Shown: piece by piece, positions 1 to 64,000 of the stretch
How the letters are laid out: each line of letters begins with the position of its first letter
Numbering within the stretch: the stretch's first letter is position 1
Assembly: GCF_001194135.2 (NCBI RefSeq)
Contig: NC_068990.1
Coordinates: 37,177,916 to 37,241,915, forward strand
Direction: 5' to 3'
DNA from: Octopus bimaculoides
Taxonomy: Eukaryota
DNA length: 64,000 nt
Translations under genes and position numbers: made by a program
Notes under the pieces: generated by a model
What the model was told of the DNA's origin: nothing
Databases searched by the model: none
What the model saw: only the letters and a program-made list of their open reading frames with translations

Positions 1-860
1 GATAATGTAGTCTTTCGTCCAATATAAGCAACCTGTGTTTGATTTGTGCCGCTTGCTCCCCTTTAGGACATTTTGGATATATAGCACATGTACTGACATG
101 ATTGTTTTAAGTCTAACATTTTTTTACTAAAATTTCATAACAATTTTTACTTTGAAAATATAGTTTCTCTCTCTTGTTCTCACTTTCTGTCTCTTCCTCT
201 TTTTCTCTTTTTTCTCCTGCTTTCTTTCTCTCCCTCATTCACTCATACTTTTCTCCCTATCAAGATATAGAGTGCAGCTTAAAAACTTTGTTGACTTATT
301 GTTTGAATACTCTAACCTAATTTATAGAGAGCAATTTCCCATTAGTCCTGCTGATAGAATACTACTATGAATACTTGTCCATGATATTCCTAAAAAGAGA
401 CATTTACAGTCATGATGTGTCGACGCCCCCTGATGATGAAGTAGACTAGCCCAATATGTAGATATAGAGGGAGAAGTCTAGATGTCGGGTAGTTGAGTAG
501 AGGTCATCCAAACGTGTGATATAACAGTAGCGACAAGGATTTCGTAGTTCACACAGCCACTGTGTAGTATTGTGAAACAAAAATCATCAAACATAAATAT
601 GTTCAATCAGTGTCAATTGAGATTAAACAGCAACTACAATCAGCCATTCAATTCTGAAGTTCTTAGATCGACAATTGCATGATTCTCAAGTATTTTGTTA
701 CTCCACAAAGGCTTGTTTAGTCTTCCATATATATATTTCTTTGCTCTTTTTCTATCTTGAAGCACAGGACAGTGGCCGTGCTGTAGTACTCCCTTCAAGA
801 GGTGACATTGAGCCTAATATTTATTTCCATCCAATGCTAAATTTTTCAATTTGCTGGACT

Positions 861-1145
861 TTCGAGTGAGATCGTTGCCAGTGCCCCTGGACTGGCTCTT
901 GTGCAGGTGGCACATAAAATACACCATTTTGAGCGTGGCCGTTGCCAGTACTGCCTGACTGGCCTTCGTACCGGTGGCATGTAAAAACACCCACTACACT
1001 CTCGGAGTGGTTGGCATTAGGAAGGGCATCCAGCTGTAGAAACTCTGCCATATCAAAATGGAGCCTGGTGTAGCCATCTGGGTCACCAGTCCTCAGTCAA
1101 ATCGTCCAACCCATGCTAGCATGGAAAGCGGACGTTAAACGATGA
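861..1145 (+). mobile_element. Family A retroposon copy (5'-truncated RTE-type LINE 3' end or RTE-tailed SINE), internal two-unit dimer, GATGA tail
   Basis: Near-identical to 29377-29670 and 20941-21175; ends ...CCAACCCATGCTAGCATGGAAAGCGGACGTTAAACGATGA. RTE assignment is inference from the tail type and related sequence downstream of the RTE ORF remnant at 7133-7252. Confidence 0.85.
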
Positions 1146-3834: not shown

Positions 3835-3893
<59 letters not shown>

Positions 3894-4124
3894 NNNNNNN
3901 NNNNNNNNNNNNNNNNNNNNNNNNNNNNNNNNNNNNNNNNNNNNNNNNNNNNNNNNNNNNNNNNNNNNNNNNNNNNNNNNNNNNNNNNNNNNNNNNNNNN
4001 NNNNNNNNNNNNNNNNNNNNNNNNNNNNNNNNNNNNNNNNNNNNNNNNNNNNNNNNNNNNNNNNNNNNNNNNNNNNNNNNNNNNNNNNNNNNNNNNNNNN
4101 NNNNNNNNNNNNNNNNNNNNNNNN

Positions 4125-4191
<67 letters not shown>

Positions 4192-4278
4192 AAGAGGAGA
4201 GAGAGAGAGAGAGAAGAGAGAGAAAGCGAGAGAGAGAGAGATACATATATGTGTATATATATATACACATATAAATAC

Positions 4279-4311
<33 letters not shown>

Positions 4312-5267
4312 TACATAATCAGATTACATGATGGATTCAAATATAAAATATACTTATATGCACATAGAATTATATATATATATACATATATATATACATA
4401 TGAGCACACACATACATGCGCACACACACACACACACACACGCACACACATATAATATATATATATATATATGTATATATATATGCATGCATACATATAT
4501 GTGTATATACATATACATCTATACATATATAGGTATATGTATGTACATATGTGTGCGAATATGTGAATTTGTGTATCTCCACACACATAATTATGCATGC
4601 ATGTGTTCTCTCTAGTTATTCTAGTTCAGCAATATAACAAGATAGAATTGTTCAGCCAATATGCTTGTGATAGGTTTTTTTTCTTTTTTCTTTATTCTTT
4701 TGTGTTTGTAGTTTTGTCTGCAGGACATTCAATATTTTACACATCTGCATATTAAGCACTATCTAGCAGATATGTTGTTTTAACTTTGTACTTGTGGTGA
4801 TGATGATTTTGATGATGATGAGGAGGAGGAGGAGTAAGAGCAGAAGAACACCAACAATGATGATGACTGGATGGTACTGGATTTGGGGATGATTACAGAT
4901 GAATGAATACTTTAAGCAATAAGGATTTATTTATTACGATGAAAATCGTGGTGGTGGTGGTCATGTTGGTGGCGGTTGTAATAGCAATGGCTATAGTGTT
5001 GGCGGTGATGGTGGCAGAGAAGCTGCTGTTGTTGTGGTGAGGGTGGAGGTGGTGGTGTTTGTCATCATCGTCGTTGTCATCATCATGGTGGTAGTGATTG
5101 TGTGCATTCTAATGATGATAGTGGGTTTAGTGATGATGATGATGAGGAGGAGGAGGAGGATTATAATGGCCAGGATGAGGATAACTATAAGATTAATTAT
5201 TTGGGCATAGATAATGATTATAATGATAATGATGATGATGGACTCTTTTAACTGTTTTGAATTTGCT

Positions 5268-42922: not shown

Positions 42923-42925
<3 letters not shown>

Positions 42926-43196
42926 CAATGTTAATTCTCTAAATGAAGTATTAACAGTAACTGCACGATAAAGTGTAGTATATTGCCACTTAAGTGTGGC
43001 TGACCCCTAGGGGTGGATGTTACTGTTGCTTTTAGCTCCAGGAGGACATCTCCTTCAGCTGGCTTATCGACACACGACTGTGTCCTGTTTGCCAAGGGAG
43101 TTATCCCTCTCACCACGACCAGCAGCACGAACGTATCCGGATTTCAGGGTTATTTCCCTTCGTCGGCGTTCGACAGCTGATGACCTTGGTGAGAGA
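42923..43196 (+). mobile_element. Family E hairpin-rich dispersed element, copy 1 (terminal cassette in flip orientation)
   Basis: Four copies in the window; starts AAGCAATGTTAATTCTC right after (TA)n and ends TGGTGAGAGA before TAT/gap. Class unknown. Confidence 0.85.
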
Positions 43197-43316
43197 TATN
43201 NNNNNNNNNNNNNNNNNNNNNNNNNNNNNNNNNNNNNNNNNNNNNNNNNNNNCCTGGCAAAATCTTATATCTTCTTTTCCAGTGACATTCTTCACTGATA
43301 TTGAAAAGGTGAAAAC

Positions 43317-43589
43317 AAGCAATGTTAATTCTCTAAATGAAGTATTAACAGTAACTGCACGATAAAGTGTAGTATATTGCCACTTAAGTGTGGCTGACCC
43401 CTAGGGGTGGATGTTACTGTTGCTTTTAGCTCCAGGAGGACATCTCCTTCAGCTGGCTTATCGACACACGACTGTGTCCTGTTTGCCAAGGGAGTTATCC
43501 CTCTCACCACGACCAGCAGCACGAACGTATCCGGATTTCAGGGTTATTTCCCTTCGTCGGCGTTCGACAGCTGATGACCTTGGTGAGAG

Positions 43590-43590
<1 letters not shown>
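43317..43590 (+). mobile_element. Family E copy 2 (identical to copy 1 as read, offset 394 bp)
   Basis: Direct comparison; followed by (TA)n; upstream flank differs from copy 1. Confidence 0.85.
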
Positions 43591-44737: not shown

Positions 44738-44744
44738 GATATAG

Positions 44745-44777
<33 letters not shown>

Positions 44778-44894
44778 CGTACATATATGTAAATATATAT
44801 GTATATATATGTAAGTAGATATATATGAATATATATATTTATATATATTCACATGCACATTACATGTATATGTATATATGTACATATTTATAGC

Positions 44895-44926
<32 letters not shown>

Positions 44927-45455
44927 TATATATGCATATACAAACATATACATATATATATATATATATATATGTATATCTATACACACATATATCTAGA
45001 TATATATAAATATATATATATACACACACATATAAACACACACACATATAAACACACACACACACACATATATATATACACAGAGGGAAAGAGAGAGAAA
45101 GGGAAAGAGGGAGAAAGAGATTATCGGTGAGATAAATAGGTATACAAATTGATTCATGGATAGACAGGAGAATTGGTATATTGAAGCAATATAACTAAAG
45201 GAGACTGAGCACTTGATAACAATAATGGTAGAAAAAAATATTGGACAGTAAGAGATATACAGACTTCAACAGAGAGATAACAATGCATTGCGATGGTGAA
45301 AGAAGGATACAGAGTGACAGAGAGTGAAAAAGGAAATGCATTCCATCCTTCTAAGATTGACTTTAAACATATATATATATATATAAATATGTGTGTGTGT
45401 TTGTGTGTGTGAGTAGACACAGGCACAGACACACATATATGTATACACATATATA

Positions 45456-45504
<49 letters not shown>

Positions 45505-45570
45505 CATTATCATCCTCATTTAATGTCTGTTTTCTATGCTGGCATAATATAAAAATGAATGTATATGTGA

Positions 45571-45680
<110 letters not shown>

Positions 45681-45803
45681 ATGTATGTGTGCATGTATGT
45701 GTGTATATGTATAAATTCATGTATATATCTATAAACACACACACACACATATATAAACATATATACTCATATATATACAAGTGCATACATATACAAGCAT
45801 ATC

Positions 45804-45839
<36 letters not shown>

Positions 45840-46211
45840 TATGTATACATATATATACACACACAGACACACACACACACACANNNNNNNNNNNNNNNNN
45901 NNNNNNNNNNNNNNNNNNNNNNNNNNNNNNNNNNNNNNNNNNNNNNNNNNNNNNNNNNNNNNNNNNNNNNNNNNNNNNNNNNNNNNNNNNNNNNNNNNNN
46001 NNNNNNNNNNNNNNNNNNNNNNNNNNNNNNNNNNNNNNNNNNNNNNNNNNNNNNNNNNNNNNNNNNNNNNNNNNNNNNNNNNNNNNNNNNNNNNNNNNNN
46101 NNNNNNNNNNNNNNNNNNNNNNNNNNNNNNNNNNNNNNNNNNNNNNNNNNNNNNNNNNNNNNNNNNNNNNNNNNNNNNNNNNNNNNNNNNNNNNNNNNNN
46201 NNNNNNNNNNN

Positions 46212-46272
<61 letters not shown>

Positions 46273-46287
46273 TAGAGAGAAAGATAG

Positions 46288-46364
<77 letters not shown>

Positions 46365-46941
46365 GATAGAGAACGACATGGGAAATATAAAAGAGATAGG
46401 GCAATGGTATGCCAGTAGTTGTACAATAAGACATAGCTAAAAGTGATAGGGGGGAAATAGATCTAAAGGGAGCTGCAGGGCCCAATATGTAAATATAAAT
46501 TTATATATATGCAATGTTACTCATTATGCACATACATATAAATGTATATATATTTATATATGTCTATATCTGTATATATATTTACATGTATGTGTGCGTA
46601 TATACATCTGTGTGTGTTTATATATATATATATATATATAGACATACACACACAAACATATATATATATATATATGTTTGTATATATATACACACACGTG
46701 CATGCACACACACACACACACATGGACACTCATATCTGCATATATAATACAGGTCTCAAGGATAACTTCTCAGATACAGTAATTAATGACATGTTGATCA
46801 TTTTGAAAGTTTAGAAATAGTATGAAAACAAAAATTACAAAATAAGCATTCTTTCATGTCTTTATGCACTTTTCCATATATATATATACATATAGGAAAT
46901 AATGATACAGGTATATATGTGTGTGTAAATATACATACATT

Positions 46942-46983
<42 letters not shown>

Positions 46984-46998
46984 NNNNNNNNNNACATT

Positions 46999-47038
<40 letters not shown>

Positions 47039-47219
47039 CATTTATATATGTATATTTATATATATTTATATATATACATACATTTATATATGTATACATA
47101 TATATATATGTATATATATATTTTTATATATATATACATATATTTGTATATGTATACATTTATATATTTATATATATACATTAATATATGTATACATATA
47201 TGTATACATGTATATATGT

Positions 47220-47313
<94 letters not shown>

Positions 47314-48513: not shown

Positions 48514-48632
48514 CAGAAGTTACAGAGTCATCCAAGAGCCAATTATTAATAAAATATATATATATATATACTCATGTTTAGAGCTCTGTTTTCCTGTTTG
48601 CATTAACAAAATTATATATGTATGTATGTATG

Positions 48633-48687
<55 letters not shown>

Positions 48688-48724
48688 TGCAGTCCAGTCT
48701 TCAGGCTAAGGATATATGTGTGTA

Positions 48725-48760
<36 letters not shown>

Positions 48761-48977
48761 GAAAGAAAAAAGATAACTAGAGAGTTAGATGTATATATAT
48801 GCATATGAATATGTATATATAGACTGATAGAAAGATAAGCAGAGGCATTTATATACATATAGCTATACATATACATATATATATATATGAATGTATATAT
48901 ACATATATATATATATGAAGATATATATACATATATATGTATGTATATATATATGTATGTATGTATATATATGTATA

Positions 48978-49014
<37 letters not shown>

Positions 49015-49049
49015 GTATGTATATATAATTATGTATATATATGTATAAA

Positions 49050-49094
<45 letters not shown>

Positions 49095-49308
49095 NNNNNN
49101 NNNNNNNNNNNNNNNNNNNNNNNNNNNNNNNNNNNNNNNNNNNNNNNNNNNNNNNNNNNNNNNNNNNNNNNNNNNNNNNNNNNNNNNNNNNNNNNNNNNN
49201 NNNNNNNNNNNNNNNNNNNNNNNNNNNNNNNNNNNNNNNNNNNNNNNNNNNNNNNNNNNNNNNNNNNNNNNNNNNNNNNNNNNNNNNNNNNNNNNNNNNN
49301 NNNNNNNN

Positions 49309-49358
<50 letters not shown>

Positions 49359-49880
49359 TGTATATATGTGTTTATGGGTGTATGTACATTTGTATGGTCA
49401 GAGAGAGGCTGGCTACTCAGTAAAACACCCCTACTATAGAGAACAGCGATAAAACAGGGAGAGAAGCACAAACAGGAAGGGAAATATTGAGAAACAGAAT
49501 TAAAAAAAAAATATTGTAGGTAGGGAGCAGAATGTAGGGAAATGTGTGCATGTGAGTAAATGTGTGTGTGTGCTTATGTATCGTGTGTGTATGTGCTTGA
49601 CTGCATGCATGTATGTGTATGTTCATATCGGAGGACCACACTGTCCATATGGCTGAAAGTGATAGAACTGATACTGTAGTTAGTGAGGAGTGAGGGATAA
49701 TGTGCTGTAGGGGGTGGTGGAGGAAAGAGATGAGTGTGAGACGAATAGATTGATTGATAAGTAAGATAGAGAGATAGAGATGAGAAGAGGGAAGCTGGAC
49801 AGGGGGAAAGAAACAGTCAAACTGACTGAGATTGATATATGATACATACAGACAGACATACAGACACACACACACACACG

Positions 49881-62022: not shown

Positions 62023-62438
62023 NNNNNNNNNNNNNNNNNNNNNNNNNNNNNNNNNNNNNNNNNNNNNNNNNNNNNNNNNNNNNNNNNNNNNNNNNNNNNN
62101 NNNNNNNNNNNNNNNNNNNNNNNNNNNNNNNNNNNNNNNNNNNNNNNNNNNNNNNNNNNNNNNNNNNNNNNNNNNNNNNNNNNNNNNNNNNNNNNNNNNN
62201 NNNNNNNNNNNNNNNNNNNNNNNNNNNNNNNNNNNNNNNNNNNNNNNNNNNNNNNNNNNNNNNNNNNNNNNNNNNNNNNNNNNNNNNNNNNNNNNNNNNN
62301 NNNNNNNNNNNNNNNNNNNNNNNNNNNNNNNNNNNNNNNNNNNNNNNNNNNNNNNNNNNNNNNNNNNNNNNNNNNNNNNNNNNNNNNNNNNNNNNNNNNN
62401 NNNNNNNNNNNNNNNNNNNNNNNNNNNNNNNNNNNNAC

Positions 62439-62709
62439 AAGCAATATTAATTCTCTAAATGAAGTATTAACAGTAACTGCACGATAAAGTGTAGTATATT
62501 GCCACTTAAGTGTGGCTGACCCCTAGGGGTGGATGTTACTGTTGCTTTTAGCCCCAGGAGGACATCTCCTCCAGCTGGCTTATCGACACACGACTGTGTC
62601 CTGTTTGCCAAGGTTTTTCTCTCTCACCAAGGTCATCGGCTGTCGAACGCCGACGAAGGGAAATAACCCTGAAATCCGGATACGTTCGTGCTGCTGGCCG
62701 TGGTGAGAT
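62439..62709 (+). mobile_element. Family E copy 3, terminal 89-bp cassette inverted (flop)
   Basis: 62439-62613 is colinear with 42923-43097; 62621-62709 is the reverse complement of 43107-43195 (86/89). Confidence 0.88.
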
Positions 62710-63018
62710 TCTGAAGAAGAAAAACAAATAGCCAGCCGCACATGTGTGGTTACATATAAAGTCTCTCTCATCTAATCAAGCAGGTGTCAAATGATTATGC
62801 TTCTATGAAGATCTGATGAAGTCCTGTAATGCAGAAACAAGACAGCTAACAAGGATCAGTTTTGTTGAGTAACCTTTTGTAGAGCATATTATCAATCCAT
62901 ATGAGGCACATATAAATCACAAAAAATCTGTTAGAAAAGAAAGACTTTGTATGCTGCAGAAATACAAAGGTACATTATTTACATTTGACGGATATTTGTC
63001 CTCATCTTGTTTGTTGTT

Positions 63019-63064
63019 AACACAACGTTTCGGCTGATATATCCTCCAGCCTTCATCAGGTGTC
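63019..63064 (-). ncRNA. Minimal type I hammerhead ribozyme motif
   Basis: RNA: GACAC-CUGAUGA-A-GGCUG-GAGGAUAUAU-CAGCC-GAAA-CG-UU/GUGUU. Stem I GACAC:GUGUU, stem II GGCUG:CAGCC, loop-less palindromic stem III ACGU, cleavage triplet GUU. Confidence 0.8.
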
Positions 63065-63111
63065 TTGGAGAAATTTCGAACCTGGGTTCTCATTCCTAAG
63101 GTATTTTTCGA

Positions 63112-63153
<42 letters not shown>

Positions 63154-63168
63154 GCAGGTCACTGCCTA

Positions 63169-63222
63169 GAATCGAACTTGGAATCTTGGGGTTAGTAGCC
63201 CGCGCTCTTAACCACTACACCA
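63169..63222 (-). promoter_or_regulatory. Internal RNA polymerase III type-2 promoter (A box 63222-63212, B box 63177-63169)
   Basis: A box TGGTGTAGTGG and B box GTTCGATTC match the consensus with tRNA-like spacing. Confidence 0.75.
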
Positions 63223-63800
63223 TATGCCCATGGGCAAATGTAAATAATGTAAATAATTCATCATCTCTTAAATATAGAACTGGAACATAAAAGTAGTTAA
63301 CTAAAAGTACTGATATGATAGAAATATTTCCAAATGCCTCGAGGTTTCCTTGTATGTAGTGGACAGTTTTAGTTAGCTAAGGGGTCAGATGTAGCAGTGA
63401 TGGTTGGTGCTCTGAATATAGGAGTTAAACACTTCAGAGAGGTGTTGTATCAACTAGGAGGAAAGAAATTTGTCCTGCAAGTGACAGGCAAACTTTATAA
63501 CCCTCGAACACAAAGTGTGATACTGCAAAGAAGCAAAACCTGAACATTAAGTTCTTCGTTACCTTTTATCTATTTAAATACAGTGACATTTTTTTTTTTT
63601 TTTAATGAATTTCGAAATAAAGTAGCAACTTTCTCATTGTTAATCTAATATCTGGAACATATATTAACATGAAATTTTAATGGATGGGTTTCAGATCATC
63701 CTAAAGCAGGAGGTTTACATCACAGAAATGGCTGGTTTCAGATGGGTTACACAGAGGCACGTGGCACATATGTATGTATATATATATATATGTATATATA

Positions 63801-63847
<47 letters not shown>

Positions 63848-63850
<3 letters not shown>

Positions 63851-64000
63851 CAATGTTAATTCTCTAAATGAAGTATTAACAGTAACTGCACGATAAAGTG
63901 TAGTATATTGCCACTTAAGTGTGGCTGACCCCTAGGGGTGGATGTTACTGTTGCTTTTAGCCCCAGGAGGACATCTCCTCCAGCTGGCTTATCGACACAC
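63848..64000 (+). mobile_element. Family E copy 4 (truncated by window end)
   Basis: Starts AAGCAATGTTAATTCTC right after (TA)n; shares variants with copy 3. Confidence 0.88.

What the first reader, a model, noticed from the sequence alone, without database searches (positions are those of the whole stretch)
63019..63064. Complete minimal hammerhead ribozyme fold inside a repeat
Seen: the minus strand reads 5'-GACAC CUGAUGA A GGCUG GAGGAUAUAU CAGCC GAAA CG UU^GUGUU-3'. Both core strings are intact, stem I has 5 bp (one G-U), stem II has 5 Watson-Crick bp, and stem III is the loop-less palindrome ACGU. Predicted cleavage is after GUU, between 63024 and 63023. Established: type I hammerheads with a loop-less palindromic stem III are the minimal form found in Penelope-like elements and metazoan retrozymes and cleave mainly as dimers; an extra A between A9 and G10.1 is a tolerated variant known from a viroid hammerhead. 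Inference: this is a functional or recently functional self-cleaving RNA. A single monomer with a GUU triplet may cleave weakly.
Basis: partly seen in the sequence, partly recalled or inferred. Interest (0 to 1): 0.9.

Follow-up and report, generated by a model that had tools for sequence, protein, structure and literature searches.

The report
Solo Penelope-type minimal hammerhead in octopus DNA
The window, from an octopus-like genome, holds one intact copy of the minimal hammerhead ribozyme motif that Penelope-like retrotransposons scatter through animal genomes; it is a real but ordinary member of a known class and probably cannot cut RNA by itself.

Summary
It is unlikely to be chance at window scale. 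Simulated sequence gave 0 hits of this quality in 96 Mb. A covariance model built only from unrelated Penelope-like-element (PLE) hammerheads picks it as the single clear hit (25 bits, E~2.5e-5).

It carries every single-sequence hallmark of the published PLE "min-HHR": an extra nucleotide after A9, G10.1-C11.1, palindromic 15.2-16.2 and no loop 3. In other organisms the same core and stem II lie 100-260 nt downstream of RT/GIY-YIG ORFs.

The source is an octopod, not a crustacean as I first guessed. "Inside a repeat" is not confirmed. I found no sister copy, PLE ORF or partner hammerhead in the window, in 122 kb of Octopus vulgaris, or in the public scans.

The best reading is a solo relic of a 5'-truncated PLE insertion beside a microsatellite, inactive as a monomer. 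It is a new member of a known kind, and of low to moderate interest.

The parts
63019..63064 (-). Complete minimal type I hammerhead motif (min-HHR)
   Evidence: Read directly. Only descriptor hit in the window. Independent covariance model R1 gives 25.0 bits, E~2.5e-5, full length.
63060..63064 (-). Helix I, 5' strand GACAC (positions 2.5-2.1)
   Evidence: Pairs with GUGUU at 63023-63019. The closing C2.1-G1.1 pair matches the class consensus (about 50 of 60).
63053..63059 (-). Core box CUGAUGA (C3-A9)
   Evidence: These positions are invariant in 59-60 of 60 reference motifs.
63052..63052 (-). Extra unpaired A between A9 and G10.1
   Evidence: An extra nucleotide (T or A) is present in 60 of 60 reference min-HHRs. 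It is listed as a class hallmark in PMC4209133.
63032..63051 (-). Helix II (GGCUG / CAGCC, with G10.1-C11.1) and its 10-nt loop GAGGAUAUAU
   Evidence: The helix can extend by one G-U pair, leaving an 8-nt loop.
63025..63031 (-). G12 A13 A14 followed by the loop-less palindrome A15.1 C15.2 G16.2 U16.1
   Evidence: The palindromic 15.2-16.2 is a class hallmark. The ACGU form occurs in 7 of 60 reference motifs and ACAUGU in 53 of 60.
63024..63024 (-). U17; predicted cleavage 3' of this base (between 63024 and 63023)
   Evidence: Position follows from the numbering. H17 in the reference set is A 29, U 20, C 8, G 3.
63019..63023 (-). Helix I, 3' strand GUGUU (positions 1.1-1.5)
63065..63113 (-). 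49-nt spacer between the microsatellite and the motif; putative 5' edge of a truncated insertion
   Evidence: A 20-nt resemblance to the end of an abundant octopus SINE is only borderline (10 of 300 shuffles).
63114..63153 (.). (ATA)13 / (TTA)13 microsatellite directly upstream of the motif-bearing segment
   Evidence: PLEs show an insertion bias for microsatellites (PMC8557442).
63154..63229 (-). Degenerate tRNA-derived head: A box TGGTGTAGTGG (63222-63212) and B box AGTTCGATTCT (63178-63168), 44 nt start to start; the acceptor stem is not preserved
   Evidence: Read. Not called by ARAGORN or by the Rfam tRNA model. No copy elsewhere.
63235..63251 (.). Left arm of the perfect 17-nt inverted repeat TACATTATTTACATTTG
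   Evidence: E~0.007 against the window. It brackets a 281-bp unit.
62971..62987 (.). Right arm of the 17-nt inverted repeat, 31 nt past the motif
   Evidence: It lies within a ~40-nt piece (62963-63000) also present in O. vulgaris at L058 13092-13131.
62921..62938 (-). First T4 and T6 runs downstream of the tRNA-like head; possible Pol III terminators
   Evidence: There is no T>=4 run between 63229 and the motif.

Best explanation
This is a solo copy of the minimal hammerhead (min-HHR) that canonical Penelope-like retrotransposons carry near their 3' ends, in their pseudo-LTRs.

It most likely arrived with a heavily 5'-truncated PLE insertion next to, or into, the (ATA)n tract of an octopod genome. 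The 17-nt inverted repeat around the unit is probably the trace of the short inverted partner copy that such insertions often make.

In an intact tandem or paired PLE, two such motifs pair through their ACGU palindromes and their helix I strands. This forms a double hammerhead that cuts the element's transcript after U17. Here there is only one copy, with no loop-closed helix III and no partner, so any RNA from this locus is expected not to self-cleave.

Shown: the motif, its fit to the class, the PLE association of that class, the octopod source, and the absence of a partner or ORF. Inferred: descent from a PLE insertion, the meaning of the inverted repeat, and inactivity.
For: (1) All single-sequence hallmarks listed for PLE min-HHRs in PMC4209133 are present. 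[quoted passage not shown]

(2) The pattern CTGATGAAGGCTG..CAGCCGAAAC occurs in 52 metagenome contigs. My rough estimate of the chance expectation is about 0.1-0.2. Helix I differs in sequence between these contigs but still pairs, and helix III is ACGU or ACAUGU.

(3) In L009, L017, L032, L016 and L015/L041, a same-strand ORF ends 100-260 nt upstream of the motif. L006 has RVT_1 (7e-10) plus GIY-YIG (3.5e-6), and L032 shows an ORF-HHR-ORF tandem.

(4) Model R1 was built from 9 min-HHRs that my pattern did not select and that have unrelated stems. It scores the window motif at 25.0 bits, E~2.5e-5, with the next hit at E 0.35. Copies verified next to PLE ORFs score 20-32 bits.

(5) Class covariation is strong: 9 of 10 pairs show double changes, and the covariation score is 0.60 against 0.18 for shuffles and 0.05-0.12 for slid controls.

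(6) Octopus genomes carry the class. L058 4664-4596 is a min-HHR with the extra A, GGC/GCC and a 10-nt palindromic helix III. It sits in a 283-bp unit with 39-nt inverted termini inside (TA)n.

(7) 13 of 50 reference min-HHRs are bracketed by a perfect inverted repeat of >=17 nt, against 1.4% of random positions. This matches the inverted truncated copies, microsatellite targeting and 5' truncation described in PMC8557442.

(8) Chance rates are low.
Against: There is no PLE coding remnant anywhere in the window (tblastn, all E>0.1).

No Rfam hammerhead model matches.

The inverted-repeat arm is part of a ~40-nt piece that occurs in O. vulgaris without a hammerhead next to it, so it may have nothing to do with the insertion.

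A tRNA-like head and a microsatellite lie between the left arm and the motif, which a simple PLE insertion does not explain.

A fully intact core in a supposed relic is expected only through ascertainment, because only intact copies get flagged.
Confidence: 0.72

Rival explanations
1. Chance look-alike: an AT-rich 2-3 Gb genome throws up a few sequences that satisfy the minimal descriptor, and this is one of them.
For: The descriptor is small, with 11 fixed core bases and two short helices. Simulation gives 0.06/Mb at stems >=4 bp. The >=5 bp rate is bounded only at about <0.03/Mb, so tens of hits per genome are possible. No sister copy or PLE ORF was found. There is no Rfam match.
Against: There were 0 hits of this quality in 96 Mb of simulation and 0 in 400 window shuffles. 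The motif also carries features the descriptor does not demand together: the extra nucleotide, G10.1-C11.1, the C2.1-G1.1 closing pair and U7, all at the class consensus. The independent model gives E~2.5e-5. Real min-HHRs appear in only 122 kb of octopus DNA, so genuine copies should far outnumber chance ones.
Confidence: 0.08
2. A SINE-like unit in which the tRNA-derived Pol III head drives transcription through the microsatellite and the hammerhead, as in the schistosome Sm-alpha / Sj-alpha elements. The hammerhead would process the transcript, in trans or as dimers between transcripts.
For: The A and B boxes lie on the same strand as the motif with canonical 44-nt spacing. There is no T>=4 run between the head and the motif, and T4 and T6 runs follow 80-100 nt after it. 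Promoter-plus-hammerhead SINE-like elements are an established type (PMC6765202). tRNA-derived SINEs are long known in octopus (Ohshima & Okada 1994, cited in PMC10886601).
Against: Neither the head nor the head-plus-motif unit has any other copy in the window or in 122 kb of octopus DNA that is otherwise dense in shared SINE-type repeats. A 39-nt microsatellite in the middle looks like the tail of one element followed by a second element. The schistosome hammerheads are canonical and active as monomers or dimers with a real helix III, unlike this one.
Confidence: 0.08
3. A small DNA-transposon-like (MITE or foldback) element, bounded by terminal inverted repeats, that happens to carry a hammerhead captured from a PLE.
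For: There are two independent octopod units of nearly equal size, 281 bp in the window and 283 bp in L058. Each has perfect inverted termini (17 and 39 nt) and a min-HHR inside. The window's arms could be read as TA-flanked.
Against: The two units share nothing but the hammerhead core and the first bases of stem II. Neither has another copy in the sample. Inverted brackets are equally typical of PLE insertions in the reference contigs (PMC8557442). The window's arm continues into a shared ~40-nt piece that crosses the supposed terminus.
Confidence: 0.07
4. A monomer of a metazoan non-LTR retrozyme that yields circular RNA.
For: The unit length of about 280 nt is in the retrozyme range. Retrozyme-like repeats are reported in molluscs and other invertebrates (PMC7229834). 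Retrozymes are argued to derive from PLE pLTRs (bioRxiv 10.64898/2026.07.22.740005).
Against: There is no tandem array and no second hammerhead in 64 kb. Retrozyme hammerheads are canonical type I motifs with loop-loop contacts and a capped helix III, which this one lacks.
Confidence: 0.03

Closest known systems
Minimal hammerheads (min-HHR) of Penelope-like elements (Cervera & de la Pena 2014, PMC4209133; dimer cleavage reported by Lunse, Weinberg & Breaker 2017, not held here)
   Same: The core is intact. Helix I is 5 bp and open. There is an unpaired nucleotide after A9, a G10.1-C11.1 pair and a loop-less palindromic helix III. The copy is dispersed and single, sits beside a microsatellite and is bracketed by an inverted repeat. 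It scores within the range of PLE-adjacent copies under an independent model.
   Different: There is no RT/GIY-YIG ORF or second pLTR in the window. Helix II is at the short end of the range (5-6 bp against the 7-8 bp described for the schistosome families). The host is a cephalopod, for which I found no specific report in the held library. Family membership within its own genome was not shown.
Octopus vulgaris min-HHR unit found here (L058 4449-4731)
   Same: It has the same core, the same extra A and the same GGCU start of stem II. The unit is about 280 bp with perfect inverted termini, and microsatellite is adjacent.
   Different: Helix II is long and interrupted. Helix III is a 10-nt palindrome. 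The termini are 39 nt long. There is no tRNA-like head and no flank similarity.
Schistosome Sm-alpha / Sj-alpha SINE-like elements (Ferbeyre et al. 1998; Laha et al. 2000; summarised in PMC6765202)
   Same: A Pol III-type promoter lies upstream of a type I hammerhead on the same strand within about 300 nt.
   Different: Those are high-copy families with canonical, catalytically proficient hammerheads. Here the copy is single, the form is minimal, and a microsatellite separates the head from the motif.
Metazoan non-LTR retrozymes (PMC7229834)
   Same: They carry a type I hammerhead in a short non-coding unit and probably derive from PLEs.
   Different: Retrozymes are tandem arrays with canonical hammerheads that give circRNAs. 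Here there is no array.
Rfam Hammerhead_1 (RF00163) and related models
   Same: The catalytic core is shared.
   Different: There is no match even at E<=10. The extra nucleotide and the missing helix III hairpin fall outside those models.

Membership tests
Hammerhead ribozyme, type I | Conserved core C3 U4 G5 A6 N7 G8 A9 / G12 A13 A14 / A15.1-U16.1 / H17 not G | tested here: met
   All positions are present on the minus strand 63059..63024.
Hammerhead ribozyme, type I | Helices I and II flank the core, with the open end at helix I | tested here: met
   Helix I is 5 bp and helix II 5-6 bp.
Hammerhead ribozyme, type I | Intramolecular helix III hairpin | tested here: not met
   ACGU has no loop and can pair only between two molecules.
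Hammerhead ribozyme, type I | Match to curated Rfam hammerhead models | tested here: not met
   There is no hit at gathering score or at E<=10, even on an 86-nt slice.
Hammerhead ribozyme, type I | Site-specific self-cleavage | not testable with these tools
   This needs in vitro transcription of monomer and dimer constructs.
PLE minimal hammerhead (min-HHR) | Unpaired nucleotide between A9 and G10.1 | tested here: met
   A at 63052. An extra nucleotide is present in 60 of 60 reference motifs. It is a hallmark in PMC4209133.
PLE minimal hammerhead (min-HHR) | G10.1-C11.1 pair | tested here: met
   G at 63051 pairs with C at 63032. In the reference set these are 58/60 and 56/60.
PLE minimal hammerhead (min-HHR) | Palindromic 15.2-16.2 with no or only a palindromic loop 3 | tested here: met
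   ACGU at 63028-63025.
PLE minimal hammerhead (min-HHR) | Short helix I (4-5 bp) and a longer than usual helix II | tested here: met
   Helix I is 5 bp. Helix II is 5 Watson-Crick pairs plus 1 G-U, at the low end of the range.
PLE minimal hammerhead (min-HHR) | Recognised by a structure and sequence model built from other PLE-associated motifs | tested here: met
   R1 gives 25.0 bits, E~2.5e-5, full length, and it is the only significant hit in the window. The E-value is rough because calibration was shortened.
PLE minimal hammerhead (min-HHR) | Location in the pseudo-LTR of an element encoding RT plus GIY-YIG | tested here: not met
   There are no PLE coding remnants in the window. The literature says most copies are solo, so this lowers the claim but does not exclude descent from a PLE.
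PLE minimal hammerhead (min-HHR) | Member of a consensus family with compensatory changes in its own genome | tested here: inconclusive
   No sister copy was found in the window or in 122 kb of O. vulgaris. The source genome could not be scanned.
Metazoan non-LTR retrozyme | Tandem repeats of about 170-400 bp, each with a hammerhead | tested here: not met
   There is a single motif and no tandem copy.
Sm-alpha-like SINE with hammerhead | Pol III A and B boxes upstream on the same strand, with no terminator before the motif | tested here: met
   The A box is at 63222-63212 and the B box at 63178-63168. The first T4 run is at 62938.
Sm-alpha-like SINE with hammerhead | Dispersed multi-copy family that keeps the head and hammerhead together | tested here: inconclusive
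   No other copy of either part was found in the DNA available.

The most novel reading that the evidence does not exclude
Octopods may harbour a distinct kind of small (~280 bp) non-autonomous hammerhead-bearing unit, bounded by inverted repeats and lodged in microsatellites. In the window's case the unit is coupled to a tRNA-derived Pol III head, so the minimal hammerhead would be transcribed on its own, as in the schistosome Sm-alpha elements, and act in trans or as intermolecular dimers. That would be a cephalopod counterpart of ribozyme-bearing SINEs, or a new PLE-derived mini-element class.
Probability: 0.1. Interest if true: 0.55.

Novelty: new member of a known kind. Interest (0 to 1): 0.25.

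Why it matters
As it stands, the finding matters little. Penelope-type minimal hammerheads are reported in hundreds to thousands of copies per genome across animals, and a solo copy is what 5'-truncated insertions are expected to leave behind.

It is useful as a marker of past PLE activity in an octopod genome. It also shows that curated Rfam models miss this class entirely, so annotation pipelines will not label such copies.

If the tRNA-like head and the motif proved to be one transcribed unit with sister copies, it would extend ribozyme-bearing SINE-like elements from flatworms to cephalopods. It would also give a tractable case for asking whether minimal hammerheads act in trans.

Tried and rejected
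- Rfam at the gathering threshold and at E<=10 on 1.1 kb and on 86 nt found no hammerhead family.
- ARAGORN called no tRNA for the upstream head.
- I first guessed a decapod crustacean from the microsatellite load. That was wrong: the window's abundant repeat ORF matches only Octopus vulgaris proteins.
- Two protein searches using accidental ORFs across the motif and across the tRNA-like head as handles found nothing.
- Alignment A1 was discarded because I had padded some sequence ends by hand. A2 was rebuilt from exact coordinates.
- The 153-nt direct repeat 1409 bp apart belongs to a different four-copy family. It has no hammerhead core, and its 15-nt resemblance to the motif is at chance level (58 of 300 shuffles).
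- The resemblance of the motif's 5' flank to the end of an abundant octopus SINE is borderline only (10 of 300 shuffles).
- The R1 runner-up at 26901-26947 has no core and is noise.
- RNAcofold of two monomers was uninformative. The designed double-hammerhead pairing is feasible at -20.7 kcal/mol, but the dimer MFE is -30.6 and the energy model ignores the core.
- The fetched hammerhead contigs share nothing with the window beyond the motif.
- Lunse et al. 2017 (PMC5785218) and the supplements of PMC4209133 are not held.

Full report
**Observation.**
- In hammerhead numbering, the CUGAUGA box is 63059-63053 and the extra A is 63052.
- Helix II is 63051-63047 paired with 63036-63032, and G12-A14 is 63031-63029.
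- The palindrome A15.1-C15.2-G16.2-U16.1 is 63028-63025 and U17 is 63024.
- The 3' strand of helix I is 63023-63019, so the predicted cleavage site between 63024 and 63023 is correctly placed.
- A type I descriptor of my own finds this one hit and nothing else on either strand of the window. It also shows that helix II can extend by a sixth G-U pair.

**Chance.**
- 400 dinucleotide-preserving shuffles of the window gave 0.02 hits per window with both stems >=4 bp and none with both >=5 bp.
- 96 Mb of first-order Markov sequence trained on the window, scanned on both strands for the palindromic-helix-III form, gave 23 hits at stems >=3 bp, 6 at >=4 bp and 0 at >=5 bp.
- At the observed quality the expectation per window is therefore below about 0.002. 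For a 2-3 Gb genome, a few dozen accidental hits cannot be excluded. A single copy is thus strong evidence at window scale but not proof at genome scale.
- No Rfam hammerhead family matches, either at gathering score or at E<=10 on 1.1 kb or on an 86-nt slice. The curated models require a helix III hairpin and have no place for the extra nucleotide.

**What class it belongs to.** Cervera and de la Pena (PMC4209133) defined a minimal hammerhead, the min-HHR, in the pseudo-LTRs of Penelope-like elements (PLEs).
- They report hundreds to thousands of copies per animal genome. Most are single and are interpreted as truncated PLEs.
- Single motifs showed no detectable cleavage, and dimers only weak cleavage.
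- The window's motif has every feature that can be judged from one sequence.

**Direct test of that class.**
- A scan of the metagenome collection for CTGATGAAGGCTG N5-15 CAGCCGAAAC returned 52 contigs, and the prokaryotic genome collection returned 2. My rough estimate of the chance expectation is 0.1-0.2: there are 23 specified bases, and the metagenome collection size is my assumption.
- In most of the contigs the rest of the architecture is present although it was not part of the pattern. Helix III is ACGU or ACAUGU. Helix I differs in sequence but still pairs, for example TTCAA/TTGAA, TCCC/GGGA and GCCG/CGGC.
- In L009, L017, L032, L016 and L015/L041, an ORF on the same strand ends 100-260 nt upstream of the motif. 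L006 carries RVT_1 (7.4e-10) and GIY-YIG (3.5e-6), both above the Pfam cut-offs, and the others have near-threshold GIY-YIG matches. L032 shows ORF, hammerhead, then the next ORF, which is the tandem PLE layout.
- The same contigs contain further min-HHRs that my pattern did not select.
- From nine of these, taken at exact coordinates, I built alignment A2 and covariance model R1 with helices I and II only. An earlier alignment with hand-padded ends was discarded.
- R1 has never seen the window's motif or its stem II. Run with filters off, it scores 63065..63018 at 25.0 bits, E about 2.5e-5, over its full length. The next hits have E>=0.35, and the best of them has no core. E-values from the shortened calibration are rough.
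- In the reference contigs R1 finds 80 motifs. The copies verified next to PLE ORFs score 20-32 bits.
- Over the 60 distinct motifs, the extra nucleotide is present in all 60 (T 32, A 28). G10.1 is 58/60 and C11.1 is 56/60. C15.2 is 59/60 and G16.2 is 58/60. H17 is A 29, U 20, C 8, G 3. The GUU site is therefore normal for the class.
- Covariation across the class is strong. 9 of 10 pairs show changes on both sides, and the covariation score is 0.60 against 0.18 for shuffles and 0.05-0.12 for slid partners. The alignment was fitted to the model, which favours the structure somewhat.

**Source organism and search for sister copies.**
- The window is a gapped draft with 4865 N, 35% G+C and a very heavy microsatellite load. 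I guessed a decapod crustacean, and that was wrong.
- The window's most abundant repeat ORF (824-1096, with copies at 20787-21107 and 29357-29602) matches only hypothetical proteins of Octopus vulgaris plus one unnamed metagenome ORF.
- 122 kb of O. vulgaris chromosome sequence fetched around those genes shares hundreds of repeat matches with the window. In the first 61 kb fetched there were 357 HSPs with a median identity of 82%. Across the full 122 kb these matches cover 9870 nt of the window. The source is therefore an octopod.
- None of those matches fall in 62760-63800.
- The motif block and the tRNA-like head have no second copy in the window. Two protein-space handles across them found nothing. 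The fetched hammerhead contigs resemble the window only within the motif.
- The window has no PLE coding remnant and no second hammerhead on either strand.
- "Inside a repeat" is therefore not shown. The decisive test of core conservation and stem covariation among genomic copies could not be run.

**Octopus does carry the class.**
- In the O. vulgaris sample, R1 finds a decayed motif at L056 6490-6532 (20.6 bits).
- The descriptor finds a good one at L058 4664-4596, minus strand: CCAUG CUGAUGA A GGC...GCC GAAA CUGAUCAG U A CAUGG. It has a 10-nt palindromic helix III.
- That motif sits in a 283-bp unit (4449-4731) with perfect 39-nt inverted termini and (TA)n on both sides. It has no other copy in the sample.

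**Surroundings in the window.** Read on the minus strand, the order is:
- the left arm of a perfect 17-nt inverted repeat (63251-63235);
- a degenerate tRNA-derived head (63229-63154), with A and B boxes at the canonical 44-nt spacing but no acceptor stem;
- (ATA)13 (63153-63114);
- a 49-nt spacer;
- the motif;
- 31 nt of further sequence;
- the right arm of the inverted repeat (62987-62971).

The unit is 281 bp. The inverted repeat is unlikely to be chance at window scale (E about 0.007).

In the reference contigs, 13 of 50 min-HHRs are bracketed by a perfect inverted repeat of at least 17 nt, against 1.4% of 2000 random positions. This agrees with the inverted truncated partner copies, the strong 5' truncation and the microsatellite targeting described for PLEs (PMC8557442). 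This is why I read the segment after the microsatellite as a 5'-truncated PLE 3' end.

There are two caveats. The right arm is part of a ~40-nt piece that also occurs in O. vulgaris (L058 13131-13092) with no hammerhead beside it, and that piece crosses the edge of the arm. The two octopod units share only the core and the first bases of stem II.

**Mechanism.** In a tandem or paired PLE transcript, two min-HHRs can pair through their ACGU palindromes. Each 5' helix I strand pairs with the other copy's 3' strand. This gives a double hammerhead with two active sites, as proposed by Forster et al. 1988 and applied to PLEs in PMC4209133 and PMC6765202. Cleavage would follow U17.

The window holds one copy only, so self-cleavage of a transcript from this locus is not expected. 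Thermodynamic cofolding neither supports nor excludes intermolecular dimers. The inference that the copy is inactive rests on the literature and on the absence of a partner, not on an assay.

**Rivals.**
- Chance remains possible at genome scale, but the class-specific details and the independent model argue against it.
- A Pol III-driven, Sm-alpha-like unit fits the promoter boxes and the absence of a T4 run before the motif (the first are at 62938 and 62926). It lacks any evidence of a family.
- A MITE-like carrier fits the two inverted-repeat units, but it is not distinguishable from the PLE inverted-copy signature with the data at hand.
- A retrozyme is contradicted by the lack of an array.
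- The idea that the motif is a diverged piece of the neighbouring four-copy repeat is rejected.

**Verdict.** The thing itself is a solo, probably inert member of a known and very widespread class. It is new only in being an octopod example, and it is missed by curated RNA models.

Noticed in passing
window 62437-62629 and 63848-64000; also 42923-43115 and 43315-43509, with an inverted piece at 62620-62708 matching 43108-43196 and 43502-43590: A ~190-nt repeat family has four copies at 96-99% identity. Each abuts an (AT)n tract or an assembly gap. A partly inverted companion segment forms a ~392-bp tandem at 42.9-43.6 kb. Part of it also matches the O. vulgaris sample.
   Followed up: partly
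window 824-1096, 20787-21107, 29357-29602 (minus strand): An abundant interspersed repeat has an open frame (…DG.TRL..D.AEFLQLDALPN.NHS.S.VG…). Its only relatives are 'hypothetical predicted proteins' annotated in Octopus vulgaris, so those gene models are probably repeat-derived ORFs.
   Followed up: partly
window 63154-63229 (minus strand): This is a tRNA-derived sequence with near-consensus A and B boxes at canonical spacing and an anticodon-loop-like CUACUAA, but no acceptor stem. It is followed directly by (ATA)13. ARAGORN and Rfam do not call it, and it has no other copy in the DNA available.
   Followed up: partly
window 62963-63000 and L058 13092-13131: A ~40-nt piece is shared between the window and O. 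vulgaris (about 92% identity). In L058 it lies inside a small element bounded by AACCCTTTCGTTAC / GTAACGAAAGGGTT inverted repeats. Its nature is unknown.
   Followed up: partly
L058 4449-4731 (Octopus vulgaris OX597840.1): A 283-bp unit with perfect 39-nt inverted termini sits inside (TA)n. It carries a min-HHR with a 10-nt palindromic helix III and a long interrupted helix II.
   Followed up: partly
L019 1058-1102(-)/1253-1297(+); L027 14075-14120(-)/14256-14301(+); L020 2711-2754(-)/2885-2928(+); L049 2694-2738(-)/2832-2876(+): In the metagenome contigs, min-HHRs often occur as close head-to-head pairs on opposite strands within longer inverted repeats. This is the arrangement described for PLE insertions.
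   Followed up: partly
L011 and L035 (metagenome contigs); L046 and L053 (the latter a Planctomycetaceae MAG); L054 (Ramlibacter MAG): The same core and stem II string occurs in prokaryote-like contigs. L011/L035 look like a canonical hammerhead with a real helix III (C-CGAAAG-G, then UC) and a 5-bp helix I. The others show no convincing helix I or III and may be chance.
   Followed up: no
window, throughout (for example 3843-4550, 36215-36493, 44739-47310, 48613-49367): The load of (AT)n, (GA)n and (GT)n tracts is very high, and assembly gaps sit inside them. Long ORF lists for this window are dominated by translated microsatellites and runs of N.
   Followed up: no
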